Of a DNA stretch of 64,000 nt, positions 2,423 to 61,931 are shown one piece after another. This DNA is from Macrostomum lignano (Eukaryota). Within the stretch, counting starts at the first letter, position 1, and each line of letters opens with the position of its first letter. Under the pieces are notes generated by a model. The model did not search any database, was not told where the DNA came from, and worked only from the letters and a program-made list of their open reading frames with translations. The stretch spans positions 338,967 to 402,966 of the forward strand of contig NIVC01000952.1 of NCBI GenBank assembly GCA_002269645.1, in the 5' to 3' direction. The position numbers and the translations under genes are program-made.

Positions 2423-2645
<223 letters not shown>

Positions 2646-3180: not shown

Positions 3181-3191
3181 CAGCAGGTCTG

Positions 3192-30155: not shown

Positions 30156-31367
30156 ATGCTTTCTCACGTGCGCTCCCTGCCTCCCAGGAGGCTGATACCG
30201 CCCCTGCTGCTGCTCGTGATCGCCAGCCTGCTGCTCGGGCTGTATAATTTCGGCTCAAACAGCTGGCTTCAAGGCATCAAATTCCACGATATCATCCAGT
30301 TCGACCAGAGGCCTGCTCCGGATAGCTTTGTACCGCGGGCCACTATGCCAGCTAAGGCTAAGGGATCTGCACCTTTGCAAGGCCTCGACACGGAGGCTCT
30401 GCGGCGAAACTTCCCGAAGCTTAAAGAAGCCACAAAACGGCACAGTGGGCCGCACAAGGCCCGCTTGGACCAGATGATGATCAGCTACCTGCCGTTCATC
30501 AGCACCAGTGCGTGGATGCTACACAGTCCAAAGGGAAAGAAGTTTACCGTATCGGAAGTTCAAGCTATATCCAACTCCACAATTCAGCCTGGATTCCAGG
30601 TGCCAAACATTGCTCACTTTGTCATGCCGTTCGGCGAAACAAACCTGCAGTTCCACCACATGGTCAGCCTCCTCAGCTGTCTGCACATAATGAAGCCTCA
30701 CCGTCTGCTGCTGTGGTACGCTCCTGGCAAGCTGCCAAGCGGACATTGGTGGGACAGAGTCAGGAAGAATCTGACCGAGTCGGAGTGGGAAGAGAAGATC
30801 ATATTCGTGCAGAGACCGATTCCCACATCTGTGTACACGGTTCCAGTTCACGGAAAAGAGCACCAGTCAGATGTGATGAGGCTTGAAGCTGTGCTCGTAT
30901 TCGGAGGACTGTACATGGACATCGATGTCCTGGTTCTGAAACCGCTGGAGCCTCTTCGGAAATTCCCTTTCACTATCGGCAGGGAGGTTCCATACGGTCT
31001 GTGCAACGGCGTCTTCTTGTCCGCTCCTAGCGGGACGTTTCTGGCGATGTGGCACACGGCGTACCAGGTGTTTTTCGACGGTTCCTGGGTTGACCATTCG
31101 GTGTGGCTGCCAAACACCATGCAACCCATTTTCCCGGACCTGTGTCACGTGGAAGAGGAGAGCATGGACCGGCCGAACTGGACTCCAGAGGAGGTGAGCT
31201 GGATCTATGTAAAAGGACAGCAGAGCAGGTGGGATTGGCGCTCGAAGAACTACGTCATGCACCTGTGGTTCCGGAAATACGGCAAGCAGCACAACATGGA
31301 CAGCATCAAGACTTTGGACAGCATGTTCGGAGAAATGTGTCGTTTTATTCTTTTTGGGGTTTTTTAA
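30156..31367 (+). CDS. GT32-like DxD glycosyltransferase (A4GALT/A4GNT-like), type II membrane protein, copy 1, 403 aa, intronless
   Basis: Short cytosolic tail, TM (LIPPLLLLVIASLLLGLY), stem, then VPNIAHF, HQSDVMRLEAVLVFGGLYMDIDV, LCNGVF, W..HSV.LP, HLW. Confidence 0.9.
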   Translation: MLSHVRSLPPRRLIPPLLLLVIASLLLGLYNFGSNSWLQGIKFHDIIQFDQRPAPDSFVPRATMPAKAKGSAPLQGLDTEALRRNFPKLKEATKRHSGPHKARLDQMMISYLPFISTSAWMLHSPKGKKFTVSEVQAISNSTIQPGFQVPNIAHFVMPFGETNLQFHHMVSLLSCLHIMKPHRLLLWYAPGKLPSGHWWDRVRKNLTESEWEEKIIFVQRPIPTSVYTVPVHGKEHQSDVMRLEAVLVFGGLYMDIDVLVLKPLEPLRKFPFTIGREVPYGLCNGVFLSAPSGTFLAMWHTAYQVFFDGSWVDHSVWLPNTMQPIFPDLCHVEEESMDRPNWTPEEVSWIYVKGQQSRWDWRSKNYVMHLWFRKYGKQHNMDSIKTLDSMFGEMCRFILFGVF

Positions 31368-31924
31368 GCGCACGTTGGATGCTCGTATATCCTTTTACAT
31401 TTTCATGTAGCTCGTACGCGTAATGCCGCTAATTCCTTTGCTTTCTACGGTATAATTTCCGGTAGTAGCTGACCAATCTTCACAGCTTCGCCGCGACTCT
31501 GTCTTGCGAAGGCGAGATCAACTCAGTGGCTTTCCATTATCACACTGTGCTTGTTTCTGCGTTTTTACTTTTCCTTTGCTTTTTAGTGCCGCAGTTGTTA
31601 GCGTGCGTTTAAAAACATAAATATACTCCTGCATGTACATGTAGGTATTTTTTTGCTTTTCGCCAAAAATCCAGCGGAGCTGCATGGCATGTGTGAACTC
31701 AAGATAACTTCTATCAAAAGTGTTTTGGTCACTGGATTGATTAAAGATGCAAAGATTAAAGACCGACTGAGTAGTGTCAATGTCATCGATAGATAAGCTC
31801 ATCTACTGTGTCCTGCTACTTACAACACAATTTGCTGAATACTATACAGCTCGTAATAAAAAACAAAGATTTTCAACATTAAAAATGTAAACTCGCGCTC
31901 TTACCGATACCGAACCATACCGGC

Positions 31925-32900
31925 ACTGGCTCGGCACTTCTGCAAGAATTCAAGTTTTCAAATTGAAAGTGAGTTGCTTCGCATGTACTTTGGTTGGCTG
32001 GCTGGAAGGTCAGGGAAGAGAGACCCCACCCAAAACACGGAGAAACGTTTTTATTTGTACAATACTATCGATGCATTCTAAGAAAATTTAGCCAAACTTA
32101 AAGGTAGTTTAATCAGTCACTTCCGCCGCTCCGTTGTCCCCTGTACAGTCCACGAAAAGGTTCCAGTTGATTCGTCTGCCGTCGATTCGTTTTTGCACCT
32201 TCGCAAAGTTCTGCTGGCCCCCCTTAGGCTTTTCTCGCTGAAAGAAACTGATGCCCACGACCCACCCGATGAAGCGACGGCCAGCTGGTCTTGTATTTAC
32301 ATGTAATTACTGAAAACCGGAATAGGCGCCAGGTGGGAACTTCCAGTCCGACACGAACAAATTCGAACGAGACAGCTGCAACAGATGACATAATATTTTT
32401 TGCCTGTTCAATATTTTTTGGTATTTTTTCAGTGTTATGAGGGTTGTTTAACAATGTCCTCTTGGAAGAAATTTGAATTGGCTTGAAGTAATTTTAGCTA
32501 CGCTCGAATGCCCAACTTATAGTCACTGTGGCGCAGTCTGCTACACTATAATATTGGCTATGCTCATAAACCTACTACACGTATGACTAGTATTGGTTGC
32601 CAGACGATCTGCTTCTCCATTTCAACTGCTCAACATACGAACTGCCGGCAGACGAATTTAATAGCTCGTAGCACCCCTCCACGAAGCACTGAGTCATTTA
32701 GTTGGTTCATTAATTTAGTTTAGGCTAGCAATCAGTTTTCTATATCCTAACATGTCTGTTTTTCCATCGCGTTCTTTTTTTGAAAGCTCAATCTTCGGCT
32801 TGAGTAAAGCGAGTAGGCGTGGCGATGCCCGCAACTCATTTTCCTGCGCTTTTTGCGCAATGTTTTTAATAGTCATCGCATCGCGCTAGACATTAACGGT
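31925..32900. mobile_element. Dispersed repeat copy B (unexpanded relative of 14340-15780)
   Basis: Collinear shared blocks. Only about one degenerate unit of the 51-54-bp repeat (~32490-32570). Confidence 0.7.
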
Positions 32901-33067
32901 TTGCATGACTACGTAATGCGCATAAACTGCTGGGTTTTCAGAATTTTGACGCAAAAAACGCAAATTATACTACTATCTAAAAATGAAGTAAGTAGTATAT
33001 GAAAACGCTATCCTAAGCGTGATATACATGGCATACTTCAATATGTAATCGTATAAGTACATTTAAT

Positions 33068-33150
33068 CCATGTACTCGCATATGTACATTAACCTCATGT
33101 ACTCGCATATGTACATTAACCTCATGTACTCGCATATGTACATTAATCCC
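33068..33150. repeat. 27-bp tandem repeat (ATGTACTCGCATATGTACATTAACCTC) x3, decaying to ~33400
   Basis: Directly visible. Confidence 0.85.
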
Positions 33151-33799
33151 TATCTACCCCAAATTGTATATGTACATTGTCTACTTCTATGTCTACCCCC
33201 AATTCTATATGTACATGTCTACTTGTGCAGTGCATACTTCGATATGTACACTTGCGCATTAATCTACTTCTATGACAATTTCTATATGTACAGTGTATAC
33301 ATTAATCCCCAATCTACACGACAGCCTCCGCTCTGCGTATTTGAATCGTCAACCCCACAAGATTATATGTACAATTCCAACTCGAAACACTAATTGTTAC
33401 GTGTACAGCGCAGTATATGCAGAGGTGGGTCGGTGTGCACGCCAGCTGTACAATCTCATCTACTACTATTCGAATACCAAATGAGTCAACTAACCCCCAA
33501 ATTTTATTAAGCACGTCATATACATTGAATAATTTATTCGAAATCACTTATAAAATACATATGCATTCATATAGAGCCGGGTCCGTATGTACATTCTCTC
33601 TCCAAGCAATGAGGTGGGGATTGCGTCATCCAAGTCTCTCCCCAAGTCTGTCCCCTGAATACAAGACTGTGTTGAAGCAGTGCTTTATACTCGTACTTCT
33701 ATTGACAGTGGGTATGATACAAGACGCTTCGTCTCGCTTTAATTGGTAATTACAGTAAACCATCCCTCGAAGCTCCTTTACTGAATGTTGAATCACCTG

Positions 33800-34280
33800 A
33801 CCTCTCACCTCTCACCTGATATACTGAACTCTGACCATAGCCAAAATTCAACCCCAAGACTGTTCGAAAACAGCCACCCCTCGGATGTTCTCCAAACTCG
33901 TCTTCACAGCGCAGGATCGAGCAAATCGAGCTAAATTAACGCTCGTCCCTGTTCTCTCTGTCCTCCCTTCTAAAAGCCAAGGAATTTCGACCCCTCTCTC
34001 CATTTTCAGTGTTACAGACAGATCTTTCCACAGCACGGACCCTATATTAAACCTCATTCAGCAAAACCCCTCTTCTCCGATTACGTCATCCAGATATAGA
34101 AGCAGTTAGCAAGAAACCAACTTTTGATGCACACATCAACCCCACGAATCTGAGCAAATCCGAGTCCGCCAACCTCTACCTGCATTGACCCAATACCCCC
34201 TGCATCTGTCAATGTACACAGCCTATGAATCAGTGTCTCCACCGCATGCAATTCTGATATACTTGATTCTAACACTTTTG
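33800..34280 (-). pseudogene. Possible decayed non-LTR retrotransposon RT C-terminal fragment
   Basis: SMQVEVGGLGFAQIR resembles the GGLG(L/F) motif of L1/Tx1-type ORF2. No other motif found. Confidence 0.25.
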
Positions 34281-36835: not shown

Positions 36836-38036
36836 ATGCTTTCTCACGTGCGCTCCCTGCCTCCCAGGAGGCTGATACCGCCCCTGCTGCTGCTCGTGAT
36901 CGCCAGCCTGCTGCTCGGGCTGTATAATTTCGGCTCAAACAGCTGGCTTCAAGGTATCAAATACCACGATATCATCCAGTTCGACCAGAGGCCCGCTCCG
37001 GATAGCTTTGTACCGCGGGCCACTATGCCAGCTAAGGCTAAGGGATCTGCACCTTTGCAAGGCCTCGACACGGAGGCTCTGCGGCGAAACTTCCCGAAGC
37101 TTAAAGAAGCCACAAAACGGCACAGCGGGCCGCACAAGGCCCGCTTGGACCAGATGATGATCAGCTACCTGCCGTTCATCAGCACCAGTGCGTGGATGCT
37201 ACACAGTCCAAAGGGAAAGAAGTTTACCGTATCGGAAGTTCAAGCTATATCCAATTCTACAATTCAGCCTGGATTCCAGGTGCCAAACATTGCTCACTTT
37301 GTCATGCCGTTCGACGAAACCAACCTGCAGTTCCACCAGATGGTCAGCCTCCTCAGCTGTCTGCACATAATGAAGCCTCACCGTCTGCTGCTGTGGTACG
37401 CTCCTGGCAAGCTGCCAAGCGGACATTGGTGGGACAGAGTCAGGAAGAATCTGACCGAGTCGGAGTGGGAAGAGAAGATCATATTCGTGCAGAGACCGAT
37501 TCCTACATCCGTGTACACGGTTCCAGTTCACGGAAAAGAGCACCAGGCAGATATGATGAGAATGGAGGCTGTGCTCGTATTCGGAGGACTGTACATGGAC
37601 ATCGATGTCCTGGTTCTAAAACCGCTGGAGCCTCTTCGGAAATTCCCTTTCACTATCGGCAGGGAGTTTCCACAGGGCCTATGCAACGGCGTCTTCATGT
37701 CCGCTCCTAGCGGGACGTTTCTGGCGATGTGGCACACGGCGTACCAGGTGTTTTTCGGCGGTTCCTGGAATGTTGCTACCAAACACGATGCAACCCATTT
37801 TCCCGGACCTGTGTCACGTGGTAGAGGAAAGCATGGACCGGCCGAACTGGACTCCGGAGGAGGTGAGCTGGATCTATGTAAAAGGACAGCAGAGCAGGTG
37901 GGATTGGCGCTCGAAGAACTACGTCATGCACCTGTGGTTCCGGAAGTACGGCAAGCAGCACAACATGGACAGCATCAAGACTTTGGACAGCATGTTCGGA
38001 GAAATGTGTCGTTTTATTCTTTTTGGGGTTTTTTAA
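36836..38036 (+). pseudogene. GT32-like copy 2, frameshifted by a net 11-nt loss at ~37770
   Basis: Near-identical to copy 1, but GTTGACCATTCGGTGTGGCTG (21 nt) is replaced by AATGTTGCTA (10 nt). The native C-terminus continues in another frame (ORF 37770-38036). Confidence 0.85.
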
Positions 38037-39546
38037 GCGCACGTTGGATGCTCGTATATCCTTTTACATTTTCATGTAGCTCGTACGCGTAATGCCGCTA
38101 ATTCCTTTGCTTTCTACGGTATAATTTCCGGTAGTAGCTGACCAATCTTCACAGCTTCGCCGCGACTCTGTCTTGCGAAGGCGAGATCAACTCAGTGGCT
38201 TTCCATTATCACACTGTGCTTGTTTCTGCGTTTTTACTTTTCCTTTGCTTTTTAGTGCCGCAGTTGTTAGCGTGCGTTTAAAAACATAAATATACTCCTG
38301 CATGTACATGTAGGTATTTTTTGCTTTTCGCCAAAAATCCAGCGGAGCTGCATGGCATGTGTGAACTCAAGATAACTTCTATCAAAAGTGTTTTGGTCAC
38401 TGGATTGATTAAAGATGCAAAGATTAAAGACCGACTGAGACACGGAGTAGTCTCAATGTTATCGATAGATAAGCTCATCTACTGTGTCCTGCTACTTACA
38501 ACACAATTTGCTGAATACGATTGAACGAAGTTTCAACAGTAAACATGTAAGCACGCTCTCGTACCGATACCGATCCACACCAACGCCGAGAACTGCATGC
38601 ATGCACTGGATACTTAATCGCCTGCCCATGGGTCTCTTGGACCGGCCCTATACGTTCTTCAGTGTACAAGCGTATGCAGCGCGATTGACGAATGCAACTT
38701 GTCGGGTCGGGCGTTAACTCCGGCAAACTCGATATTTCTGGCCCCCTTAATTTCACCTGTAAATAGAGCTATTCACTTCAGACGCATTGGGACCTGAGGC
38801 TTGGAGTTTGGAGAAGGGGCCAACAACTGTCTTGATCTTATATCCTCTCTGATTGGCCGCTTGGATGTGCAGTTGCATGAAATGACAACGACTCAATTTT
38901 GGCTGCCACATACACATAAACTTATGAAGCTCCAGTTGTCAACAAATATTTTGAGTGCCGGTTGGAATCCGGACTGTCATGCATCCATGGTACTACTAAA
39001 CTAACGTGCATGTGCATTTAACATGCATGTTCATGTTTGCTGCCGAGTACAAAATAGCGATACCAATTCAATTCGTCCGTGCAAAACTCGAGGCCATTCT
39101 ACATACTCGGTGTCCCACATCTGGTAGCTCGCAAGTGACATGTGAGCTTGGTTAGGGTTTTGCCACCAGCTAGAAGACGATCTAAGCACATTGCTCTCCA
39201 GGATCAGTTGCCTTTGCTGGCCCTCATTGCCTTCCACAGGCGAGTTAAACCTTACTATGCTCCTACCCTTCCGTTTGATGCTCATGTGCAATCGTGTTCT
39301 TTTTCGCCCTCCTGCCCCGCCCCAACCCTTCCAGTCTGCCCCACCCCTCCAATCAATAATCAATGCGTACGCCACCTCGCACCACCACCCACCCCGTCTA
39401 CCATAAAAAGTGCACGGCGAACTGCATCGGCTACGGTGTGTAAGTTCGTGCTCGCGAGTTACTGTCCTTTTGGGGACCTGGGGGTCGCAGCTTCCCGACA
39501 GGTTAAAGCTGTAGGCGTCGCTTCGGAGGACAGGGCTCACAACAAC

Positions 39547-39564
39547 TGGTGCCGTGACCAGGAT
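39547..39564 (+). promoter_or_regulatory. Primer-binding site complementary to tRNA-His 3' end
   Basis: TGGTGCCGTGACCAGGAT, 2 nt after the LTR; close to the usual tRNA-His PBS TGGTGCCGTGACTCGGAT. Confidence 0.8.
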
Positions 39565-39713
39565 TCTAGTTAGGGTTTCTGTTAGATTTCTGTCTGTGTT
39601 GTCTGGGGTAGTGCAATATTGAATTAGTGATTTAGTGCGTTAGAATTAGTTTTGCATCAGAATTAGCTCGTAGTTTTGCGTTAGAACTAGCTCGTAGTTC
39701 TGTGCAAGCGATC

Positions 39714-40664
39714 ATGGCCAATTTAGACGATCTTATCGGTGCTTTGACAGCGAGAATCCAGGAGCAGTTGAACGTGGGCCAGCGCGTTCCACGTCCTAAT
39801 AAGTATGTGCCGACTCAAGATTTTGCTTTGTGGTTGCAACAGTTTACCACGTACTGCGAGGCTGCTCAGATCCCTGAGGATCAGCGGAAGCAGAATTTGC
39901 TGAGTCTGTTGGACTTTGGCACGGCTTTTAAAGCAGTGGCCAATCTCGAGCTGGATGATGACTTGGACCACGCAGAGTTTGTGGAGCAGCTGGAGGCTCG
40001 CTTTAGTCAGAATCGCACACCCCAGGACTACAAGACAGAATTTCAAAACAGGAGTCAGAGAGAGGGGGAAGCACTAGAGGATTACGCTGACGCTCTCAGG
40101 GAGCTCATGCATGAGGCATATCCGGCTCTGCCAGTGAAGCAAAGGGATGAGCTAGCAAAAGACCGATTCTTGAAGGGGATCCGAGTGCCGGACAGGGTGC
40201 TTGAGAATGTCTTGCTGCAGGACCCTGACATGCTGCAGGCCGCGATCCAGCGAGTGCGCCAGACTCTCGCATCGATGAAGCTTCTGGAGGGAAAGCTGTC
40301 AGTTCACGTGGTGAACAGTCAGGCGGCAGCTGCTGCAGCGGACAGTCAGACAGCTCGCATGGCTGCGGAGATCGCCAGCTTGAAGGCAGAGATCGCGCAG
40401 CTGAAGCAAGGAGGGGCGTCGGCCTTGGCGGTGCAGCCGAATCCGCAGCAGCCGGCAGCCGCGCCTCAGGCGGTCAGAACCTGTGGGAGGTGTCTTCAGA
40501 TGGGACACTCGACGGCGGACTGTAGGAATCGAGTAGTTTGCCTTGCCTGCGGCCAGCAGGGCCACACTCGTTCCAGGTGCCAAAGTCACCAGGCTGCTCG
40601 AAATCAGGGAAACGGGATGGGGCCCGGCCAGGCCAGCGTCCCGGGCGTCGTCTGCAGTGATTGA
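39714..40664 (+). CDS. gag: Gypsy gag with two CCHC zinc knuckles
   Basis: Open ORF; CGRCLQMGHSTADC and CLACGQQGHTRSRC. Confidence 0.9.
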   Translation: MANLDDLIGALTARIQEQLNVGQRVPRPNKYVPTQDFALWLQQFTTYCEAAQIPEDQRKQNLLSLLDFGTAFKAVANLELDDDLDHAEFVEQLEARFSQNRTPQDYKTEFQNRSQREGEALEDYADALRELMHEAYPALPVKQRDELAKDRFLKGIRVPDRVLENVLLQDPDMLQAAIQRVRQTLASMKLLEGKLSVHVVNSQAAAAAADSQTARMAAEIASLKAEIAQLKQGGASALAVQPNPQQPAAAPQAVRTCGRCLQMGHSTADCRNRVVCLACGQQGHTRSRCQSHQAARNQGNGMGPGQASVPGVVCSD

Positions 40665-43600
40665 GGAAGCGCCAGGGCCCACAACCCAGATCCAGAGTGT
40701 GCTTGGTGGAACTGGACTGGGTTATATTGACGCAAAATTTGAATATGGGCCCTTGGTTGGTTGCTTGCTGGACAGCGGGTCCACAGTGTCATTACTTAGT
40801 AGTCGTTTCCTAGAATCTGCCAAAATTAAGAATCTGATTCAGCATTGTAGTACTGATTTTTCAATTTACACAGCGAGTGGCGAGGCAATTCAAATTTTAG
40901 GCCGAACTAATCCGAATTTTTCGATTGGTGAGACGAAATTCGAGCACGAATTTTTTGTTGTCGATGAAATTTCACAGCCATGCATTTTAGGAACCGATTT
41001 TTTCATTAGACATTGCATGATAACTGATTTCGCTAGACACTGCCTGCAGACGGAATCTTCTGTCTTTCCTTTCCGTTTGTGTGCTGACAGACCTCTTGTG
41101 TGCCGAATCGTGCTGCGCCAGGCTGTCCGGATGGATGCCGGTGAGGAGAAGCTGGTCCCAGTCCGCCTTCAGAGACGCGGGGTGAGGGGATTTCAGTTTC
41201 CTGGAATAGTGGAGTCCGAGCGTCGGGCAGCAGGTGATCATTTGCTGGCCAGATCGGTGCAGTTGCCTGATCAAGAGGGTCAGTTGTCTGTCAGGATTCT
41301 GAACACGTCGGAGTGCAGTTTGTCGATGAGGCGGGGCACTCGAGTCGGCTGGTTTTCGCCGGTCTCTGCGCAGAAGCCAGCAGAGCTGCAGCTGAATGCC
41401 GTCCAGTCAGAAGGAGAGCTGTGGAGTCCCCTCAGCGAAGTCAAAGAGTGGGGTGCCTGCGGCCTATCAGACGCAGAGGCAAGAGAGTTTGTTTCCCTGG
41501 TTGCCAAAAATCGTGACGTCTTTGCCAAAGACAGCTCTGAACTCGGGCTCACGAATCTGATGGCACACGAAATCGACACGGGTAACGCAAAACCTGTGAC
41601 TGAACCCTTGCGCAGAATCACGCCCCACTGGAGAAATGAGGTTGACAAACAGGTTGATCAATTGCTGGCGAAAGGCCGCATCTATCCCTGTCAGTCGCCC
41701 TGGTCGAGCCCAGTGGTTCCGGTTAGAAAGTCGGATGGCAGTCTCAGAATGTGTCTGGATTACAGGCGCCTGAACAGCGTGACCGTGCCTGATCCTCTGC
41801 CTCCGCCCAGAATGGATGAGACTCTTGATGCGCTCGGGGGAAACTGCATCTTTTCCACGATGGACTTGGAGTCGAAAGACCAGTTAAAGACCGCTTTCGT
41901 GGTGCCGAATCGGGGACAGTTTGCGTGGAAGTGCATGAGTTTCGGGCTCAAAAACGCCCCGTCAACTTTTACGAGACTCATGTCTATGGCACTGTCAGAA
42001 GTCAACTAGAAGGAATGCCTCGTCTACTTCGACGACATAGTTGTCTTCTCTACGACTGTGCAGCAGCACTTCGAGCGCCTTGAGCATGTGTTCCTATGTC
42101 TCAGAAGAGCCAACATCAAGCTGAAGCCAGCAAAATGTGTCTTTCTGGCCGAAAAGATTAGCTTCTTAGGTCTTAGGTATTAGGTTCAAGGATGGAATAG
42201 CGACGAACCCAGAAAAGTGTGCCGTAATCCAGGACTGGCCCAGGCCTTGCAGTGTGGCCAAAGTCCAATCGTTTCTCGGACTGTGCGTCTACTACAAAGC
42301 TTTCATTCCAAATTTTTCCGAGATGGCCGCTCCGCTCTACAGACTTGTAGCGAACGATGCCGAGTTCAAATGGGGCCCAGCCCAAGAGCAGTCGTTCAAC
42401 AGTCTGAAAGCGGCTCTGTGTTCGCCAAGCGTTATGGCTTTTCCAGACTTCTCGCCAAACGCTGGTGAGTTTATTCTTGACACGGATGCCAGCTCTCGAA
42501 TTGGGCTTGGTGCGGTGCTGTCACAGCGCCAGTCGGACGGGTCTGAGGTGATAGCCTATGGATCTCGAATGATCCAGGCAAGCGAGAAAAACTACTGCAC
42601 CACCCGTCTCGAGCTGTTGGCAATTGTGCACTTTATCAAAAAGTACGATACTGTCTACTCGGGAAAAAATTCACTGTGAGATCTGATCACAAAGCCTTGC
42701 AGTGGCTCGCCAGCATCCGTGATGTTGAGGGTCAATTTGCTCGATGGCTGGAGACACTGCAGAACTATGACTTTGTTATAGAACACCGGGCCGGGAAAAA
42801 TCACTGCAATGCAAACTCTTTGTCTCGAAAACACCTAAGGCACACAGGGCATGAGACTTGTCCTAGTTGCGCACCGGCTCAGCGCAGCAATGGTGTCAAT
42901 GCGATATTTCGGAGTGTGCTACAGAAGGAAGATATACAGTCAGCTCAAGAAGCAGAGTCAAAGCTGAAGATCATCAATAATTTCTTGACAGATCATGTCG
43001 ACGGGTCAACTCCACCGCAGGTGATGTGTTGGGAGGAGAGGTGTCTGTGGTCTCAGCGTCAGCTGATCAGGCTTGAAGCGCAGGTTCTGGTTTTTGAAGG
43101 CCCAGGGTCTGAGGTTCTGAAAATTATCTTGCCGCCGAGCTTGTTTCAGAAGGTCTTCAATGAGCTGCATGACGGAGTCACAGGTGGTCACCTAGGGATC
43201 AAAAAGACCCAGGAGAAGGTGAAGGCTAGATTTTGGTGGCCTGGAATTTCAAGGAAGTTCGAGGAGTACTGCAGGAGCTGTGTGCATTGTGCCCGGTCAA
43301 AACCAGGCCAGGCCAATCGAGCTCCGCTGCACCCGATTGTGTCAGAAGCTCCGTTTCAGCGAATAATGTGCGACATCGTCGGACCATTGCCGCGATCTAG
43401 GAATGGGTCCAGATTCATTCTGACCATTCAGGACTCGTTCACTAAGTGGCCAGTTGCCGTGGCACTTTCAAATCAGCGTGCGAGCACGGTGGCAAAGGCC
43501 ATCTTCGACAATTGGATAGCGCAGTTTGGTTGCCCCGAGTTCCTTGTGACGGACAAAGGCACCAACTTTGTGTCACTGCTGGTAAAGCAGCTGTGTCAGC

Positions 43601-44370
43601 TGATGGCTGTTAAAAATGCCGAACAACGGCCTATCATCCAATGGCCGATGGCCAGGCAGAAAGCTTTACAAAACGCTAAAAATATGATAAAATACCGGCA
43701 GAGTGAGGCTGAGAGTGATTGGAAGGAGTTGATCGCTCCATCACTTCTCGCCTACCGCAGTAGTGTCCATCGTGGCACTGGGTACACTCCGTGCTACATG
43801 TTGTACGCAAACGAAATGCGCCTTCCAGTCGATATTGGGAACCTGCCGGAAGCAGTACCGGCTGATGCACCGGAGTACCTGTTGTCTCTGGGGCACAGGC
43901 TCGCGGAGGCGCATTCACATGTAAGGCAAAATCTGCAAAATTATCAGCGGAAACAGAAAATCATATACGACTCAAGAGTTCGAGGTCCGAACATAGAGGT
44001 AGGAGATACAGTACTCGAATATTCACCGGCCCTGCAGCCGAACGAAGCGGCAAAATTTCACAATTATTGGAAGGGCCCAGCCGAGGTGATAGAGAAGCTG
44101 TCGGACATTAACTTCAGAATTCGCCATCAGAACAGTAGGAAAGACAGAGTGGTGCACTATAACAACCTTCGCAAAGTGCCTCAACGTCCCGTTGAGCTGC
44201 AGGCTCCGAGACCGCCGAAGCAAAGGCGCAGAAAACGGAAGGGGCAACGTGAAGTTGTTGTCGTGGGCGAAGAGCCGCAAGAGTCGGAGCCCAACTCGGA
44301 TGGCGATGACTCACAGTTTGTCTATGTGCCAGCGGCGGTGCATCAAGACATCCAAGCGCCGCAGGACTAA
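40543..44370 (+). pseudogene. pol: Gypsy pol (protease, RT, RNase H, integrase), disrupted
   Basis: LLDSGST protease; TAG at 42007 before KECLVYFDD; frameshifts near 42180 and 42670; ILDTDAS RNase H; GGHLG..FWWP..CVHC and DIVGP integrase; WKGP motif. Confidence 0.92.
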
Positions 44371-44958
44371 CCGGTTCACGCTGCAGCACCTCCGGCTTCG
44401 CCACGCAGGCTTCGGCCTAGGAGAAACAATCCGCCTGCTCGCTACGGCGACCCAGTACTATATTAGTTCCATGCATTCAAACTATGAATAAAAAATGTGA
44501 ACAACCAAAAAAATTACAAAACAGGACAAAAACAACGAAAAACAACACTTGCTCATAAAGTACATGCTTACAGTAAGCAAACAGTTCAATTACAGTACGC
44601 TTTTTATAGTTAGTATTTGTTTAGTTTAGAAGTAGTCGGGCTAGATCGGTTTGTCTTTGTTGGAGAGCTTAGCAGTAGGTGGCACCTGCTCGGGAAGCTG
44701 CACTCCCTGTTTCCATGTTGGGGTTCCTCGGCTCGTTCCTCGGGGAGGGCCAGGCTCAAAAGGACACCAAGGGCAAGGAGTCGAGCATCAAAGACCGGCA
44801 GGAGTCACTGCGCAGCTGACTGCACCTACGGATCCGTCCAGCGTGAGAACAGTGAACCGGCGCGCGGGAGATGCGGATGCGGCTTCAGCAAGTCGGCCGG
44901 AGGCTGGATGGCGCAAGTCGACGGGATCGTGGGTCGGCTCGCAGATCGGTAGTCCGTC

Positions 44959-44995
44959 CAAGGACTTCTAGACTAGTCTAGTCTAGAAGTCCTTG
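44959..44995. mobile_element. 37-bp palindromic micro-insertion with 8-bp TSD (AGTCCGTC)
   Basis: CAAGGACTTCTAGACTAG-T-CTAGTCTAGAAGTCCTTG, with AGTCCGTC at 44951-44958 and 44996-45003. Confidence 0.75.
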
Positions 44996-45959
44996 AGTCC
45001 GTCGTGTTGGAGTCGAGCAGAGTCCGGCGCAGCCCACCCGGCCTGATTTACTTCATTTTAGTGCATTTTTTGAAGTATTTTTGGTTCATTTTTTTCTCTT
45101 GACAATTTGGCATTATTAAACTGCTGTTTTACGTTCATGTCGCAAGAAATTCTTCGAAGTTAAAGTAATATTGGTAAGACATTTGTGCAATTTTTTCGTT
45201 GCGTTGCGTTTTTCATTTTCCGCGTTTATTTCTCTCATATTTATCGTCCAAAAATGCGTTTCCTCAGTACACTTATCATATGCGTCAAACTCGTTTTTTC
45301 ATTGCCGACCAAAAATCGAAAAGCATCCCCTTTCCCGTCAAATTCGAATGTCATTAACGCTGAAACTGTTTTTCTTAAATCTCGTTGTCAAGTGCATTAT
45401 CCGCGTTTATTCTCATTGCGTCTTCGTACCTGTCAAACTCAAAAAATCCTGTCTTTGTCCCATTTCAGTCTTTGTTCTTGAGACTCGCCTTTTTCAAGGA
45501 GAGGAGGATGTTGTGCAATCGTGTTCTTTTTCGCCCTCCTGCCCCGCCCCAACCCTTCCAGTCTGCCCCACCCCTCCAATCAATAACCGATGCGTACGCC
45601 ACCTCGCACCACCACCCCATACCGTACATTTGTTCTTAAGTTATATTCATGTACGCGTAGGACCAATGAAAAATATATAATGAAGTCGCTGTCTGGAGGG
45701 CAGACTCCTCCCTTGCTCGCGTTTGGTCCGCCTCCGTTGGCTATTGAATAAAACGACTCGTCTACCATAAAAAGTGCACGGCGAACTGCATCGGCTACGG
45801 TGTGTAAGTTCGTGTTCGCGAGTTACTGTACTTTTTTCTGCTTCTCCCTAGGGCGCGGGACGGGAGCTCTGACTGGGGACCTGGGGGTCGCAGCTTCCCG
45901 ACAGGTTAAAGCTGTAGGCGTTGCTCCGGAGGACGGGGCTCACAACACTCACAATGGAA

Positions 45960-48942: not shown

Positions 48943-50118
48943 ATGACGCAGCAATCGCCAAAGCGGCTGCTGCCCGCTCTGCTGCTCTGTCTGACGCTGG
49001 CGCTGCTGGTCAGCCTGTACTACATCGGGCCGCTAATCAGCATTGGCAGCGCGTCTGTGCTGCACCGTCAACTGGCGCTGCCTATTGCCCTTTCTCTATC
49101 AGCCGAGCGCAATAGCAGCCCGTTGTACAGTTCGATGGACGTGGAGGCACTGCGCTTGAACTTCGTGCGCCTGCGTGAAGCAGTGCGACTCCACAGCGGC
49201 AGGTACCACAGCCGACTGGACCAGATGATGGCCACCTACCTGCCAGCTGTCGACACCAGCGCATGGTCTCCGCACAGTCCCAGCGGCAAGAAGCTCACCA
49301 TTGAGGAGGTCCATTCCGTGGCGAAGTCGACCATTCAGCCTGGATTCCAGGTGCCAAACATTGCTCACTTTGTCATGCCGTTCGGCGAAACCAACCTGCA
49401 GTTCCACCAGATGGTCAGCCTTCTCAGCTGTCTGCACATAATGAAGCCTCACCGTCTGCTGCTGTGGTACGCTCCTGGCAAGCTGCCAAGCGGACATTGG
49501 TGGGACAGAGTCAGGAAGAATCTGACCGAGTCGGAGTGGGAAGAGAAGATCATATTCGTGCAGAGACCGATTCCCACATCCGTGTACTCGGTTCCAGTTC
49601 ACGGAAAAGAGCACCAGTCAGATGTGATGAGGCTTGAAGCTGTGCTCGTATTCGGAGGACTGTACATGGACATCGATGTCCTGGTTCTGAAACCGCTGGA
49701 GCCTCTTCGGAAATTCGTTTGCACCATTGGCAGGGAGGTTCCATACGGTCTGTGCAACGGCGTCTTCTTGTCCGCTCCTAGCGGGACGTTTCTGGCGATG
49801 TGGCACACGGCGTACCAGGTGTTCAACGATGAGGCTTGGGGCGAGCACTCAGTGAAGCTTCCGCACTCGATGCAAGCCACCTTCCCGGACCTGTGTCACG
49901 TGGAAGAGGAAAGCATGGACCGGCCGAACTGGACTCCAGAGGAGGTGAGCTGGATCTATGTAAAAGGACAGCAGAGCAGGTGGGATTGGCGCTCGAAGAA
50001 CTACGTCATGCACCTGTGGTTTCGAAAGTATGGACTTCAGCACAATATGGAAAGCATCAAGACTTTAGACTCAAATTTTGGTGAGATGTGTCGCTTCATC
50101 TTGTTCGGAATATACTAG
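48943..50118 (+). CDS. GT32-like copy 3, divergent/mosaic paralog, 391 aa
   Basis: ATG at 48943 follows a polypyrimidine-CAG acceptor (ending 48935). TM LLPALLLCLTLALLVSLYYI; catalytic domain largely identical to copies 1 and 4. Confidence 0.9.
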   Translation: MTQQSPKRLLPALLLCLTLALLVSLYYIGPLISIGSASVLHRQLALPIALSLSAERNSSPLYSSMDVEALRLNFVRLREAVRLHSGRYHSRLDQMMATYLPAVDTSAWSPHSPSGKKLTIEEVHSVAKSTIQPGFQVPNIAHFVMPFGETNLQFHQMVSLLSCLHIMKPHRLLLWYAPGKLPSGHWWDRVRKNLTESEWEEKIIFVQRPIPTSVYSVPVHGKEHQSDVMRLEAVLVFGGLYMDIDVLVLKPLEPLRKFVCTIGREVPYGLCNGVFLSAPSGTFLAMWHTAYQVFNDEAWGEHSVKLPHSMQATFPDLCHVEEESMDRPNWTPEEVSWIYVKGQQSRWDWRSKNYVMHLWFRKYGLQHNMESIKTLDSNFGEMCRFILFGIY

Positions 50119-51305: not shown

Positions 51306-51423
51306 GACTTGACTTACTTGACTTAGCTGCAGGGGGCGTCCGGCGGATGCAGCGAGGAGGCGGAGGAGACCGCCCATTCCGCTAGCCCCTGGCGACCAAC
51401 GACTTCCGTTGAAGTGGTGTCGC

Positions 51424-56986: not shown

Positions 56987-57622
56987 CAGCAGCTTGTTAG
57001 TACCATTCTGCGCAATGACAGAAGATGCAATCGACCGAATTGAATTGAGGCTGAACTGTGCCAGCCAGTATGAAATTTGACATTATTTGAGCTTGAGCCA
57101 TTCGATTTTACGAAGCTCAGCGATGCCAGCCAGGCACACCAACTGTCAATTTCCCTTTGCTTCTCCACCAGGTTCTGAGCACTGATTGCGTCAAGTGACG
57201 TGAGTCCGTTTGAGAGATTGAACAGCTTGTCTACTAGTTCACAAAATCGGGCTGTGTGGAGTGCAGAAGCAGATTGAATGACTCCATGAGCGTGATAGGT
57301 TCTTAGAGCTTGCGCCATTCGGGCACATATACATGTGATCAGCGAAGTGCTGACTGCACACCACTGCAGTCGCCCATTTGTGCTCATACTTCTTCCCCAG
57401 GTCAGCACGGAAGATGCGACGAGCCCAGTCTTCACACCTACAGCGTAAAATTCAACATAAATCGTACACAAGTTTTCATGCAAATAATATTAGTCACGAT
57501 TCGACTAAGCTTACCGGGCACGGTTTGAAGGAAAGCTGTGAAACCTGGTTTCTGGTGGACAACGATAGGAATAATTTGGACAGCCATAGGCAGCACTGTT
57601 TTCGCGATTTTGCAGAAGGCAT
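56987..57622 (-). pseudogene. THAP domain and truncated P-type transposase core (5' side of the LINE insertion)
   Basis: ATG at 57622; (C)AAYGCPNY..RFHSFP, then a 77-nt GT-AG intron 57514-57438, then CEDWARRI..VVCSQHF; fused directly to HTARFCELVDKLFN. Confidence 0.8.
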
Positions 57623-59194
57623 ACTTCACTGCAGCAAAACCAAACATCCAAATTCTTTGTGAAAAGACAATGCTGCTGCAAGTAATTCTATTAAATGAAA
57701 TATCTTGTGCTACACACTTGAGTAATAGTCTATGGCTACTTATGTTTCTTCACCGGATTAGTAGTTTGTACGCATATCTATTTCTACGCAGTTTAATTTC
57801 ATTAAATCGCTGATTGAGCATTCTGTGTAAGTTCTGTGCAGTAAGTCCTACGCTGCACTCTTATCATTCGACGGTCGAAATCATTGCGTACGGCTACTAA
57901 AAATCAATATGAGACAATTTACTTGTGCATGTGGGTTTTGTCATAGACAATGATCAATTTTTGCCACTCTCGGCGAAGTTGTCTACCTCCAAAACCATGC
58001 ATACAATCTGCCAAATATTTTACTAAAAAACGACGTTCGGAAAAATCCACTAAAGAATGCAAAAGCAATTGAAAAATTACCAGAACTTCCATTTGCATTT
58101 TTAAACCTTGGCTTGAGTAAAAGAAACTTATAAATTAGCCTCGCACATGTTTGTCCGAGTTCGAGTCGCGAGCTAAACAAATGCCTCGTACGTTTCAAAC
58201 ACGTTCGGAAGTCCAATAGGTGAGAAGTTGTCAGTGCTATAAGCTAAAAACTTCCTGTCTCTCTAATGAACTTCGCAGAGAAAGCGGCCTCCAGAGAAAC
58301 GATTTGTACGATTTTAGGGCGTAGCAACCGGGGCCGTAGGTTGGTGGTGCCAACGGCTCAGGCTCGATTCCAACAGTCATCAATTATAATATTAATTATT
58401 AATCATTAATTATTAGCCAATTAAATTGAAATCTCGGCTCTGCTCGTGCAATTAGCGCCACTGAGGACCAATCCCCAAGGCACAGTGCAGACTTAATTGT
58501 ACATGCCTAACGATAAATAAAGTCCGGGCCACATGTACACTCCTGTGTCAGTGTGTGCCTGTGCGTATGACTGGCGTACGCATCTGCGCGGCTGTGTGCC
58601 TGCTCAGGGGAGTCAGCAGAATAGACAGTGATGCCTCTCACCGGTTGTGTGACAATGTCGCTGAAAGTGCGCCAGGGTGATTTTCAAGACTTGAGATACT
58701 TTTGAGATAATCGAGAAATTGGATCCAGATTCGAGATTCAGCCTAATTTTCATCTAGTAGGCCGGCATATTTGCACTTTTCTCTGTATCAATGTTAATAT
58801 TGGAACTTGTTAAACGTATGCATTGATGATAATAGAAAGAAAAACAAAGATTATTTAATTTTGAGCTTGTTAATAACTTGATTTATATCAAATGTAGTAA
58901 TGTAAGTAAATGATATTGAATAACATCGGCAAGCTTCCAGATTGTTTCGCGATATTATTACTATTTTCAAGTTTGAATCGGTGCCAAAACATAGTGCCTC
59001 TGAGCACTACTAGATAGAGCAGTTTATAGTATTAGGTAAATGGAGCAGTAGCAAATTGGTAGATGGAGCAATAGATAGGGCAGTAAAAGTAGCAATAGAT
59101 GGAACGGTAGATAAGAGCAGTAGATAGAGTAATTTATAGAGCATTTTCTGATGCCATTTTCTATCTATCCCTTTTGGCCACAGATATCATTTTC

Positions 59195-60000
59195 TATCAT
59201 GGCACTGTTGCAGCACCAATTCAAAATAGAAAATAATATTGCTTTTGCAGCCCATTTGGGCTTACGCGCTTTGAATTTAATCCAAGATATGTTTGCCAAT
59301 GTAATGGAGCTTTTGTCTATGGTAGAAAGGCTGGCACAGTGGCATTTCATTTGGTCCAACAAGCATCAATTTGGTCCATAATTTCATTTGCAACTGCTGC
59401 GGAGGAGCAAGATCAGCCCCAGAATTGTGGACCATATGCTAGGCTGTCAAACCAATGCCATTGGCTTGCAATTGCAGCACTCGAAAGAGTTGAGAACACC
59501 CAAAGAAAATTGCAAGGTTGCTGAATGTAAGAAATGATGGTTTACAGCATCCAGCAGCGCGTTAAAACTCTGACGGCAGAGATTGCAAGTCACTCGAGAG
59601 CCTCAAATCCAACTGCTACTCGATGCAGTTGAGACGAATCCTTTTTTGACGTTGCAGAAAATGCAGCAGAAGTTGAGGGAACAGCTCCAGTTGGTTATCA
59701 GATTTCGACTATGAGCAGAAGCGCTGGAAAAGCAACTCAAAATTGTTGGTAGAGACGCTGACATTCCAGCGGTGCGCAACAACCTGCAGACGGTTGAGAG
59801 AAGGCAAGAGTTTGTCCAATGGCTCGCGAGTTTAGTATTGATGCTTGTTGGACCAAATGAAATGCCGCTGGGCCAAGCTTGCCATAGACAAAAGCTCCAT
59901 TGCATTGGAAAACGTATCTTGGATTAAATTTAAAATGCGCGTAGGCCCAAATGGCTGCAAAAAGCTATATTCGGAAGCAAACTGATGATCACCATAACAG
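59195..60000 (+). mobile_element. Tc1/IS630-like transposase N-terminal fragment between ~170-bp inverted arms
   Basis: QLLLDAVETNPFLTLQKMQQKLREQL...PAVRNNLQTVERRQEFVQW resembles an HTH/Tnp region. 59195-59380 is the reverse complement of ~59830-60000. Confidence 0.55.
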
Positions 60001-60348
60001 CATAATATCATAGTCACAAATAGTCATGTAATTTCAAATCTTGACATTTTCGAGATCTTGAAACTGAAATCCAGATTGAAAAAAGTGCCGAGATCTTACC
60101 CGACCCCTAACCACTTCAAAGCACATCTATAAGCTGCGGTGAACGCTAAAAGCCGTTTAGAATTTCAGATCGCAGGAATATTACTTAGTTTTGCGCAATA
60201 GGGACTAAAACATCCCACATGCACATTGTAATTATAATTATAATTCAATAGCATCAACCTACTCCTTTCTCTTACTGCAGTGCTGCCTGTTCTGTCCAAA
60301 GTTCTTGAAACTGACTGCAGACTGCACTCTAGAATTTCCTGACATTCG

Positions 60349-60664
60349 ACTGACATTGGCACCGATTGACATTGGCACCGACTGACATTGGCACCGACTG
60401 ACATTGGCACTGACTGACATTGGCACCGATTGACATTAGCACCGATTGACATTGGCACCGACTGACATTGGCACCGACTGACATTGGCACTGACTGACAT
60501 TGGCAACTGACTGACATTGGCACCGATTAACCTTGGCACCGACTGACATTGGCACCGATTGACATTGGCACCGGTAGACATTGGCACCGATTAACATTGG
60601 CACCGACTAACATTGGCACCGATTAACCTTGGCACCGACTGACATTGGCACCGATTGACATTGG
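60349..60664 (+). repeat. 16-bp VNTR (GACATTGGCACCGACT)n, ~20 units, ending 50 nt before the ATG of GT copy 4
   Basis: Same unit and same 50-nt spacer as copy 1. Confidence 0.95.
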
Positions 60665-60713
60665 ACGGGAGACGAGCAGGCGCGGTGTCTTCTACTAATG
60701 ACTTAAATTCTTC

Positions 60714-61931
60714 ATGCTTTCTCACGTGCGCTCCCTGCCTCCCAGGAGGCTGATACCGCCCCTGCTGCTGCTCGTGATCGCCAGCCTGCTGCTCGGGCTG
60801 TATAATTTCGGCTCAAACAGTTGGCTGCAAGGCATCAAATACCACGATATCATCCAGTTCGACCAGAGGCCTGCTCCGGATAGCTTTGTACCGCGGGCCA
60901 CTATGCCAGCTAAGGCTAAGGGATCTGCACCTTTGCAAGGCCTCGACACAGAGGCTCTGAGGCGAAACTTCCCGAAGCTTAAAGAAGCCACAAAACGGCA
61001 CAGCGGGCCGCACAAGGCCCGCTTGGACCAGATGATGATCAGCTACCTGCCGTTCATCAGCACCAGTGCGTGGATGCTGCACAGCCCAAACGGGAAGAAG
61101 TTTACCGTATCGGAAGTTCAAGCTGTATCCAATTCCACAATTCAGCCTGGATTCCAGGTGCCAAACATTGCTCACTTTGTCATGCCGTTCGGCGAAACAA
61201 ACCTGCAGTTCCACCACATGGTCAGCCTTCTCAGCTGTCTGCACATAATGAAGCCTCACCGTCTGCTGCTGTGGTACGCTCCTGGCAAGCTGCCAAGCGG
61301 ACATTGGTGGGACAGAGTCAGGAAGAATCTGACCGAGTCGGAGTGGGAAGAGAAGATCATATTCGTGCAGAGACCGATTCCCACATCCGTGTACACGGTT
61401 CCAGTTCACATAAATCAGCACCAGGCAGATGTGATGAGGCTTGAAGCTGTGCTCTTATTCGGAGGACTGTACATGGACATCGATGTCCTGGTTCTGAAAC
61501 CGCTGGAGCCTCTTCGGAAATTTCCTTTCACTATCGGCAGGGAGGTTCCATACGGTCTGTGCAACGGCGTCTTCTTGTCCGCTCCTAGCGGGACGTTTCT
61601 GGCGATGTGGCACACGGCGTACCAGGTGTTTTTCGACGGTTCCTGGGTTGACCACTCGGTGTGGCTGCCAAACACCATGCAACCCATTTTCCCGGACCTG
61701 TGTCACGTGGAAGAGGAAAGCATGGACCGGCCGAACTGGACTCCAGAGGAGGTGAGCTGGATCTATGTAAAAGGACAGCAGAGCAGGTGGGATTGGCGCT
61801 CGAAGAACTACGTCATGCACCTGTGGTTCCAGAAGTACGGCAAGCAGCACAACATGGACAGCATCAAGACTTTGGACAGCATGTTCGGAGAAATGTGTCG
61901 TTTTATTCTTTTTGGGGTTGTTTCAATTTAG
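60714..61931 (+). CDS. GT32-like copy 4, 405 aa, intact
   Basis: Differs from copy 1 at 9 internal residues and at the C-terminus (FGVVSI versus FGVF). Confidence 0.9.
   Translation: MLSHVRSLPPRRLIPPLLLLVIASLLLGLYNFGSNSWLQGIKYHDIIQFDQRPAPDSFVPRATMPAKAKGSAPLQGLDTEALRRNFPKLKEATKRHSGPHKARLDQMMISYLPFISTSAWMLHSPNGKKFTVSEVQAVSNSTIQPGFQVPNIAHFVMPFGETNLQFHHMVSLLSCLHIMKPHRLLLWYAPGKLPSGHWWDRVRKNLTESEWEEKIIFVQRPIPTSVYTVPVHINQHQADVMRLEAVLLFGGLYMDIDVLVLKPLEPLRKFPFTIGREVPYGLCNGVFLSAPSGTFLAMWHTAYQVFFDGSWVDHSVWLPNTMQPIFPDLCHVEEESMDRPNWTPEEVSWIYVKGQQSRWDWRSKNYVMHLWFQKYGKQHNMDSIKTLDSMFGEMCRFILFGVVSI

What the first reader, a model, noticed from the sequence alone, without database searches (positions are those of the whole stretch)
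30630..61430. All three possible pairings of the four GT copies are supported within ~250 bp: direct footprint of gene conversion
Seen: GAAACC..CACCAG (copies 2+3) versus GAAACA..CACCAC (1+4); a few codons later AGCCTT (3+4) versus AGCCTC (1+2); then CAG GCA (2+4) versus CAG TCA (1+3). These incompatible partitions fail the four-gamete logic, so no single duplication tree explains them. Inference: repeated short-tract ectopic conversion is shuffling micro-patches among paralogs.
Basis: partly seen in the sequence, partly recalled or inferred. Interest (0 to 1): 0.7.

Follow-up and report, generated by a model that had tools for sequence, protein, structure and literature searches.

The report
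Gene conversion among tandem flatworm glycosyltransferase genes
Four neighbouring copies of a glycosyltransferase gene in the flatworm Macrostomum lignano have swapped stretches of sequence with each other, an ordinary process called gene conversion.

Summary
The window is Macrostomum lignano assembly Mlig_3_7, contig NIVC01000952. It holds four intronless GT-A/DXD glycosyltransferase paralogs: c1 30156-31367, c2 36836-38092 (frameshifted), c3 48943-50118 and c4 60714-61931. A fifth copy, c5, lies just past the window end.

As evidence they are weak:
- PHI on the four copies gives p=0.12, and p=0.50 in the core.
- Parallel mutation alone gives at least two conflicting pairings in 1-20% of simulations.
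- The assembly was Pilon-polished with short DNA and RNA reads, which could create single-base mosaics.

The inference of ectopic conversion is nevertheless strongly supported by larger signals:
- c3 and c5 have no fixed difference from c1/c2/c4 across a 491-bp core (dS 0.05). The flanks are saturated (dS above 1), and outgroup paralogs show dS 0.8 in the same core.
- c3 is a c5-like then c1-like recombinant (P about 1e-19).
- c3 and c5 are identical over 687 bp.
- On a collinear second array, the c4 counterpart carries its neighbour's core.

Tracts run to hundreds of bp. Micro-patches remain unproven. This is a known phenomenon at a new locus, of low to moderate interest.

The parts
30156..31367 (+). 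c1: intact intronless GT paralog (403 aa), A-type
   Evidence: ORF; Pfam PF04488 Gly_transf_sug, 32.7 bits against a cutoff of 23; counterpart c1p on contig 506 is 99.75% identical in protein
36836..38092 (+). c2: A-type paralog with an 11-bp deletion after 37768 (c1 nt 934-944). The deletion shifts the frame and gives an aberrant C-terminus, so c2 is a probable pseudogene
   Evidence: the counterpart c2p on contig 506 lacks the deletion
48943..50118 (+). c3: mosaic paralog. Its 5' end is unique, c3 49192-49878 is identical to c5, 49882-50021 is A-type-like, and its 3' end is unique. The mechanical ORF starts at a TTG at 48889
60714..61931 (+). c4: intact A-type paralog (405 aa)
   Evidence: 100% identical to L001:10001-11218
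30582..31072 (+). Homogenised core in c1 (c1 nt 427-917, aa 143-306, including the DXD motif at D255/D257)
   Evidence: No fixed difference between 6 A-type and 4 c3/c5-type sequences here, against 47 fixed differences in nt 284-426 and 20 in nt 918-975. dS between c3 and c1 is 0.048
37262..37752 (+). Homogenised core in c2
49333..49823 (+). Homogenised core in c3
61140..61630 (+). Homogenised core in c4
49192..49878 (+). c3 tract identical to the off-window copy c5: 0 differences over 687 bp (c1 nt 286-972)
   Evidence: c5 differs from its own counterpart c5p at 6 sites in the same interval
49882..50021 (+). Second A-type-like tract in c3 (c1 nt 976-1115): 1 difference from c1 and 16 from c5 over nt 976-1110
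30641..30867 (+). Equivalents: c2 37321/37339/37351/37547, c3 49392/49410/49422/49618, c4 61199/61217/61229/61425
39285..45617 (+). Gypsy-like LTR retrotransposon inserted between c2 and c3. It is a spacer, not part of the mechanism
   Evidence: 106-nt direct repeats at 98% identity, 6227 bp apart; gag/PNMA, aspartyl protease, RT and integrase domains; absent from the collinear contig 506
51424..55127 (-). LINE-like non-LTR retrotransposon ORFs (EEP endonuclease, RT, RNase H) between c3 and c4. A spacer

Best explanation
The region is a tandem array of at least five intronless paralogs in Macrostomum lignano. They encode type-II-membrane, GT-A-fold, DXD glycosyltransferases (Pfam Gly_transf_sug). 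The array is evolving in concert through repeated non-allelic (ectopic) gene conversion. Three anciently diverged lineages are present: the A-type (c1, c2, c4), c3 and c5.

Shown:
- All copies share a 491-bp donor-binding core that has been homogenised, including at synonymous sites.
- Their 5' TM/stem regions, a 58-bp patch and their 3' ends remain saturated with differences.
- c3 is a patchwork: a unique 5' end, then c5 sequence, then A-type sequence, then a unique 3' end.
- Some events are more recent than the duplication that produced the second, collinear array on contig NIVC01000506.

Inferred:
- The mechanism is double-strand-break repair that copies from a neighbouring paralog without crossover. 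The unique flanks of each copy are kept, and exchange is confined to the stretch where identity is high enough.
Individually they could also be parallel mutations or polishing errors.
For: Identity of the locus:
- The window matches GCA_002269645.1 NIVC01000952.1 with 0 mismatches over a 13,287-bp overlap.
- Gene family: PF04488 hits above the curated cutoff; an AF2 model with pLDDT 80.8 and a GT-A fold; Foldseek neighbours are glycogenin/GT8-like retaining transferases at E about 1e-6.

Mosaicism of c3 and c5:
- c3 against c1 shows 0-2 differences per 50 nt in the core and 12-29 per 50 nt in the flanks.
- There is no fixed A-type versus c3/c5-type difference in nt 427-917.
- dS between c3 and c1 is 1.14, then 0.048, then saturated, then 0.043, then saturated along the gene. 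The outgroup paralog o2 against c1 shows dS 0.82 in the core.
- The core/flank contrast between c3 and o2 gives Fisher p=5e-13.
- A GENECONV-like permutation gives pair p<=2e-4 for c1-c3, c3-c4 and c3-c5, and global p=2e-4 for c3-c5.
- In c3, 84 c5-like sites are followed by 17 c1-like sites, with the switch at nt 973-1005. P is about 1e-19.

PHI:
- p=5e-5 for 10 sequences over nt 292-1209, 0.027 for the core alone, and 0.028 for the five copies on the window's contig.

Recent, array-specific events:
- c3 and c5 show 0 differences over 687 bp, while c5 and c5p differ at 6 sites there (Poisson P=0.0025).
- The core of c4p is 2 differences from c5p but 14 from c4, while its flanks differ from c4 at only 5 of 718 sites (Fisher p=0.004).
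- The 5' 426 nt of c2 are 4-6 differences from c1/c1p but 15 from c2p.
- Of 6 variants shared by exactly two non-orthologous copies, 5 are shared within one array.
Against: - The specific three-partition observation is not significant alone (PHI p=0.12 and 0.50; homoplasy simulation 1-20%).
- The same-array excess of shared doubletons is only 5 of 6 (one-sided binomial about 0.11).
- Mlig_3_7 was polished with Pilon using Bowtie2-mapped Illumina reads and STAR-mapped RNA-seq. In a core shared by at least 10 near-identical copies, this can both create single-base mosaics and erase true differences, so it may exaggerate the 0/687 identity between c3 and c5.
- No reads were available to check this.
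- The direction of each conversion could not be determined.
- c3's counterpart on contig 506 lies in an unfetched 5.4-kb gap.
Confidence: 0.85

Rival explanations
1. The four single-base conflicts are polishing artefacts. Short Illumina and RNA-seq reads from at least 10 near-identical cores were mis-assigned, and Pilon wrote another copy's base into the consensus. Real conversion at this fine scale would not then be needed.
For: - The assembly methods state Pilon v1.20 polishing with Bowtie2 shotgun reads and STAR RNA-seq reads (PMC5730564).
- The sites are isolated single bases inside a 98-100% identical core.
- c1 and c4 carry A at nt 486 while their counterparts c1p and c4p do not.
- Transcript-based gene models at this locus are chimeric between paralogs, which shows that reads and transcripts map ambiguously here.
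Against: - Two of the four states are reproduced in independently assembled counterparts: T at nt 516 in c4 and c4p, and G at nt 712 in c2 and c2p.
- 5 of 6 doubleton variants are shared within one array. Random mis-mapping does not predict this.
- Polishing cannot explain the tract-scale mosaics, which recur on three contigs.
Confidence: 0.25
2. The four sites are parallel (recurrent) point mutations on a fixed duplication tree. The conflicts among the four copies are homoplasy.
For: - Only 4 informative sites exist in the core, and PHI is non-significant for the four copies.
- Simulation gives at least two conflicting partitions in up to 20% of runs under strong rate heterogeneity.
- Two of the sites are third-codon-position synonymous changes.
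Against: - Three of the four changes are transversions.
- The same region shows many further incompatibilities once counterpart copies are added: 64 of 210 site pairs in the core are incompatible, with PHI p=0.027.
- Multi-site patches move together, for example the five sites at nt 811-822 that c4p shares with c3/c5.
Confidence: 0.15
3. The near-identity of the core reflects purifying selection on the catalytic domain, or on an overlapping element, rather than sequence exchange.
For: - The core encodes the conserved donor-binding half, including the DXD motif; the invariant columns are concentrated between aa 150 and 340.
- Antisense ORFs overlap the core in three copies.
Against: - Synonymous divergence collapses from above 1 to 0.05 only among the array copies. 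The outgroup paralogs o2 and o4 keep dS 0.82-0.87 in the same core (Fisher p=5e-13).
- The boundaries are abrupt.
- c3 switches parent along its length.
Confidence: 0.02
4. The mosaics arose by unequal crossing-over, giving hybrid genes with copy-number change, rather than by non-crossover conversion.
For: - The genes are arranged in tandem and head to tail.
- Spacer lengths and N-terminal repeat number differ between the arrays.
- Both processes come from the same recombination intermediates.
Against: - c3 needs at least three switches while keeping unique 5' and 3' ends and unique intergenic flanks.
- The core of c4p is replaced while both of its flanks stay c4-like.
- Gene order c1-c2-(c3)-c4-c5 is conserved between the two arrays.
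Confidence: 0.1

Closest known systems
Concerted evolution of tandem gene families by interlocus (ectopic, non-allelic) gene conversion. Examples recalled from general knowledge, not tested here: primate globins, RHD/RHCE, CYP21A2/CYP21A1P, opsins.
   Same: - Paralogs a few kb apart in direct orientation.
- Tracts of about 10^2 to 10^3 bp with sharp boundaries.
- Synonymous sites homogenised while unique flanks are kept.
- Paralogs within one array are closer to each other than to their counterparts in the other array.
   Different: Exchange here is confined to an internal catalytic-core segment shared by three lineages that are otherwise saturated with differences. The host is a recently genome-duplicated flatworm, so a second and a third array serve as internal controls.
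GT32 / Pfam PF04488 (Gly_transf_sug) DXD glycosyltransferases. UniRef labels the M. lignano proteins 'Alpha-1,4-N-acetylglucosaminyltransferase' (A4GNT-like).
   Same: - PF04488 hit above the curated cutoff.
- DXD motif (D255, D257) invariant across homologues.
- GT-A fold with an N-terminal helix, as expected for a type II Golgi enzyme.
- A single coding exon.
   Different: - Only the DXD-proximal part of the Pfam profile matches (positions 50-87 of 93).
- No Gb3_synth C-terminal domain was found at E<=0.01.
- No solved structure matches by sequence.
- Donor and acceptor specificity are unknown, so the A4GNT name is an automatic label and is not verified.

Membership tests
Ectopic gene conversion / concerted evolution in a tandem paralog array | Mosaic similarity with abrupt boundaries between otherwise divergent paralogs | tested here: met
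   0 fixed differences in nt 427-917 against 47 in nt 284-426 and 20 in nt 918-975; sliding-window differences
Ectopic gene conversion / concerted evolution in a tandem paralog array | Homogenisation extends to synonymous sites and is not explained by constraint (outgroup control) | tested here: met
   dS between c3 and c1 is 0.048 in the core and 1.14 or saturated in the flanks. The outgroup o2 against c1 shows dS 0.82 in the core. Fisher p=5e-13
Ectopic gene conversion / concerted evolution in a tandem paralog array | Within-array paralogs are more alike in the tract than positional counterparts in a duplicated array | tested here: met
   In the core, c4p differs from c5p at 2 sites and from c4 at 14 (p=0.004). 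c3 and c5 differ at 0 of 687 sites, while c5 and c5p differ at 6
Ectopic gene conversion / concerted evolution in a tandem paralog array | Flanking sequence on both sides of the tract keeps its own identity (non-crossover) | tested here: met
   c3's 5' and 3' ends and its intergenic flanks have no similarity to the other copies. c4p's flanks differ from c4 at 5 of 718 sites
   PHI p=0.12 (9 informative sites) and p=0.50 in the core. The test becomes significant only with c5 and the counterpart copies added (p=0.028 to 5e-5). The GENECONV-like pairwise test on the four copies is significant for c1-c3 and c3-c4
Ectopic gene conversion / concerted evolution in a tandem paralog array | Variants verified at read level, so not an assembly or polishing artefact | not testable with these tools
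   No reads are available. The assembly was Pilon-polished with short DNA and RNA reads
GT32 / PF04488 DXD glycosyltransferase | Pfam Gly_transf_sug hit above the gathering threshold | tested here: met
   30.1-34.3 bits against a cutoff of 23 for all four copies
GT32 / PF04488 DXD glycosyltransferase | Conserved DXD motif within a GT-A fold | tested here: met
   D255 and D257 are invariant in 11 homologues. The AF2 model (pLDDT 80.8) matches GT-A retaining transferases at E about 1e-6, with modest TM-scores of 0.3-0.5
A4GNT / A4GALT subfamily (the UniRef label) | C-terminal Gb3_synth domain (PF04572) following Gly_transf_sug | tested here: not met
   No Pfam hit other than PF04488 at E<=0.01
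A4GNT / A4GALT subfamily (the UniRef label) | Alpha-1,4-GlcNAc or Gal transferase activity | not testable with these tools
   Requires a biochemical assay

The most novel reading that the evidence does not exclude
The array may be a modular 'constant core, variable ends' system. Recurrent conversion, possibly favoured by selection, would keep one shared donor-binding/DXD core across three anciently diverged glycosyltransferase lineages. The stem and the C-terminal regions (the acceptor-binding role of the latter is presumed from general GT-A knowledge) would be shielded from exchange and free to diversify. On top of this, genuine micro-conversion with tracts under about 20 bp would be shuffling single variants at a high rate, after the recent genome duplication and separately in each array.
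Probability: 0.15. Interest if true: 0.45.

Novelty: new member of a known kind. Interest (0 to 1): 0.25.

Why it matters
Gene conversion among tandem paralogs is textbook biology, so the phenomenon itself is not new. The locus has practical value for three reasons.
- M. lignano is a hidden polyploid, so two or three collinear arrays in one genome act as internal controls. They date conversion events relative to the genome duplication.
- Mlig_3_7 gene models at this locus are chimeras between neighbouring paralogs. Phylogenies or dN/dS analyses of this family in Macrostomum will be misleading unless conversion tracts are masked.
- It is a concrete case in which short-read polishing limits what single-nucleotide mosaics can prove.

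Tried and rejected
It is underpowered, so I did not use it as support.
- A pair-count test of same-array against different-array sharing came out 24 against 20. It is uninformative, because sites where an orthologous pair plus one other copy share a variant contribute equally to both classes. Restricting to doubletons gave 5 against 1, p about 0.11.
- I tried to obtain c3's counterpart on contig 506. It lies in a 5.4-kb gap between loci L005 and L003. An exact-product look-up of c3 found nothing, and no annotated protein covers the gap.
- A sequence search of the PDB with c1 gave no meaningful hit, so I used a fold search instead.
- Selection on the core as the sole explanation is rejected on the outgroup dS.
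- A literature search for gene conversion in M. lignano found nothing relevant to this locus.
- I considered retroposition as the origin of the intronless copies. I set it aside because c1, c2 and c4 share upstream or downstream flanking homology, and because the arrays are tandem and collinear.


Full report
**What the window is.** Protein search with the first GT ORF returned Macrostomum lignano proteins only at high identity. The locus fetched for the top hit overlaps the window end with 0 mismatches over 13,287 bp. The window is therefore GCA_002269645.1 (Mlig_3_7, DV1 line), contig NIVC01000952.1, starting near record position 338,967.

**The genes and their neighbours.** Four intronless ORFs lie on the + strand: c1 30156-31367, c2 36836-38092, c3 48943-50118 (the mechanical ORF starts at 48889) and c4 60714-61931. 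A fifth copy, c5, lies just beyond the window end, at L001:12996-14400.
- All four window copies hit Pfam PF04488 (Gly_transf_sug, DXD) above its cutoff and hit nothing else.
- An AlphaFold model of c1 (pLDDT 80.8) has an N-terminal helix, a disordered stem and a GT-A domain. Its nearest solved neighbours are glycogenin/GT8-like retaining transferases, with E about 1e-6 and modest TM-scores.
- The spacers hold a Gypsy-like LTR element (39285-45617) and LINE-like ORFs (51424-55127, minus strand).

**The observation.**
- c1 nt 486 and 504 split the copies 1+4 | 2+3.
- nt 516 splits them 1+2 | 3+4.
- nt 712 splits them 1+3 | 2+4.
- All four sites fall within 227 bp.

**Do these sites exceed chance on their own?** Only weakly.
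- The four copies have 9 parsimony-informative sites in all, and 4 in the conserved core. My PHI implementation gives p=0.12 and p=0.50 respectively.
- Simulating parallel mutation with the observed branch loads gives at least two conflicting partitions in 1-20% of runs.

**The stronger signal: c3 and c5 are mosaics.** c3 is not a fourth near-identical copy. Along the gene, c3 against c1 shows about 50% differences for nt 1-280, about 30% for nt 290-426, 2% for nt 427-917, about 35% for nt 918-975, under 1% for nt 976-1110, and about 25-30% at the 3' end.
- I added c5, the counterpart copies c1p, c2p, c4p and c5p from the collinear contig NIVC01000506, c5q from NIVC01001447, and two outgroup paralogs o2 and o4.
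- With these, there is no fixed difference between the A-type (6 sequences) and the c3/c5-type (4 sequences) across nt 427-917. There are 47 fixed differences in the preceding 143 nt and 20 in the following 58 nt.
- Nei-Gojobori dS between c3 and c1 is 1.14, then 0.048, then saturated, then 0.043, then saturated across the five segments. The outgroup o2 against c1 keeps dS 0.82 in the core. The contrast gives Fisher p=5e-13. Constraint therefore cannot explain the identity.
- c3 equals c5 at 84 consecutive discriminating sites, then equals c1 at 17, switching at nt 973-1005. P is about 1e-19.
- GENECONV-like permutation gives pair p<=2e-4 for c1-c3, c3-c4 and c3-c5.
- PHI becomes significant with more sequences: 0.028 for the five copies on this contig, 5e-5 for ten sequences, and 0.027 for ten sequences in the core only.

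**Timing.** Contig 506 is collinear with the window at 97-99% identity in most flanks (93% around c2) and lacks the Gypsy insertion. M. lignano is a recent hidden polyploid, and DV1 carries extra chromosome copies (PMC10468722; PMC5730564). Several exchanges post-date that duplication.
- c3 and c5 have 0 differences in 687 bp, while c5 and c5p differ at 6 sites there (P=0.0025).
- The core of c4p is 2 differences from its neighbour c5p and 14 from c4, although its flanks differ from c4 at only 5 of 718 sites (p=0.004).
- The 5' 426 nt of c2 are closer to c1 (4-6 differences) than to c2p (15).
- At single sites, 5 of 6 variants shared by exactly two non-orthologous copies are shared within one array. 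This is suggestive only, with p about 0.11.

- At nt 486, A is derived and is present only in c1 and c4, not in c1p or c4p.
- At nt 504, G is derived and is present in c2, c3, c5 and c5q.
- At nt 516, T is in c3, c4, c4p and c5.
- At nt 712, G is derived and is present in c2, c2p and c4.
- The 1+4 | 2+3 pairing therefore reflects two separate events.
- Two of the four states (T at 516 in c4, G at 712 in c2) recur in the independently assembled counterparts c4p and c2p.

**Caveat on polishing.** Mlig_3_7 was polished with Pilon using Bowtie2-mapped Illumina reads and STAR-mapped RNA-seq. In a core shared by at least 10 copies, this can write one copy's base into another or erase real differences. 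The single-base mosaics cannot be certified without reads. The tract-scale mosaics cannot be produced this way, and they recur on three contigs.

**Mechanism.** The best explanation is recurrent non-crossover repair that copies from a neighbouring paralog.
- Shown: the mosaic structure, the homogenised synonymous sites, the retention of unique flanks, and the array-specific events.
- Inferred: exchange is limited to the segment where identity is high enough, which would make the homogenised core self-reinforcing.
- The core spans aa 143-306. This is the donor-binding half of the GT-A domain and includes D255-x-D257.
- Not determined: the direction of each event, the minimum tract length, and any role of selection.

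**Comparison and novelty.** This is concerted evolution by interlocus gene conversion, a well-known process, at a locus not previously described. A literature search found nothing on this locus. The gene family is PF04488/GT32-like. The UniRef 'A4GNT' label is not verified, because no Gb3_synth domain was found.

**Verdict.** This is a new member of a known kind, with interest about 0.25.

Noticed in passing
window 30156-38076, 48943-61928, 60714 to beyond 64000 (L001:10001-14402): All three NCBI gene models on this contig splice one GT paralog into the next. PAA74387 joins c1 aa 1-392 to the frameshifted tail of c2. PAA74388 joins c3 to the end of c4. PAA74389 joins c4 to c5. None equals a simple single-copy ORF. 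They are either mapping or assembly chimeras, or read-through transcripts.
   Followed up: partly
window 37768/37769: c2 has an 11-bp deletion (c1 nt 934-944). It shifts the frame and gives a 418-aa ORF with an unrelated C-terminus. Its counterpart c2p on contig 506 is intact. c2 also carries the most private substitutions, 14 in the core.
   Followed up: partly
L003:~1178 (contig NIVC01000506): The counterpart of c4 (c4p) has a 1-bp deletion at c1 nt 886 that breaks the frame. This could be a real pseudogene or a long-read indel error.
   Followed up: no
window 61410-61416: c4 alone carries four substitutions within 7 nt (GGAAAAG to ATAAATC), which changes Gly-Lys-Glu to Ile-Asn-Gln. The cluster is absent from c4p and from every other copy and outgroup. 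It is either a multinucleotide mutation or a short conversion from an unsampled donor.
   Followed up: no
window 39285-45617: A Gypsy-like LTR retrotransposon with gag/PNMA, protease, RT and integrase domains and 106-nt LTRs at 98% identity. It is present here but absent from the collinear contig 506, so it is a recent insertion. The ORFs are split across frames.
   Followed up: partly
window 51424-56706 (minus strand): A LINE-like element with EEP endonuclease, RT and RNase H ORFs, plus an upstream 417-aa ORF with no Pfam hit, lies between c3 and c4.
   Followed up: partly
L001:12996-13400 and L003:9401-9800: The N-terminal region of c5 contains a tandem peptide repeat (roughly TPKTGHKTDSQ) whose copy number differs between the two arrays.
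   Followed up: no
window 29831-30106 and 60345-60664: c1 and c4 share about 325 bp of upstream sequence made of tandem repeats of roughly 60-80 bp. c2 shares only about 60 bp upstream with c1, but about 550 bp downstream.
   Followed up: no
window 36101-39284 vs L005:16951-20187: The c2 region is only about 93% identical between the two collinear arrays. The c1 region is about 99% and the c4 region about 97%. Divergence along the duplicated block is uneven and unexplained.
   Followed up: no
window 1131-3532, 47012-47677, 3807-4685: There are long microsatellite and minisatellite tracts that give spurious ORFs (CLSV and GESR repeats), a 20-bp-period tandem array at 47012-47677, and a TRM5/TYW2-like methyltransferase exon at 3807-4685 on the minus strand.
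   Followed up: no
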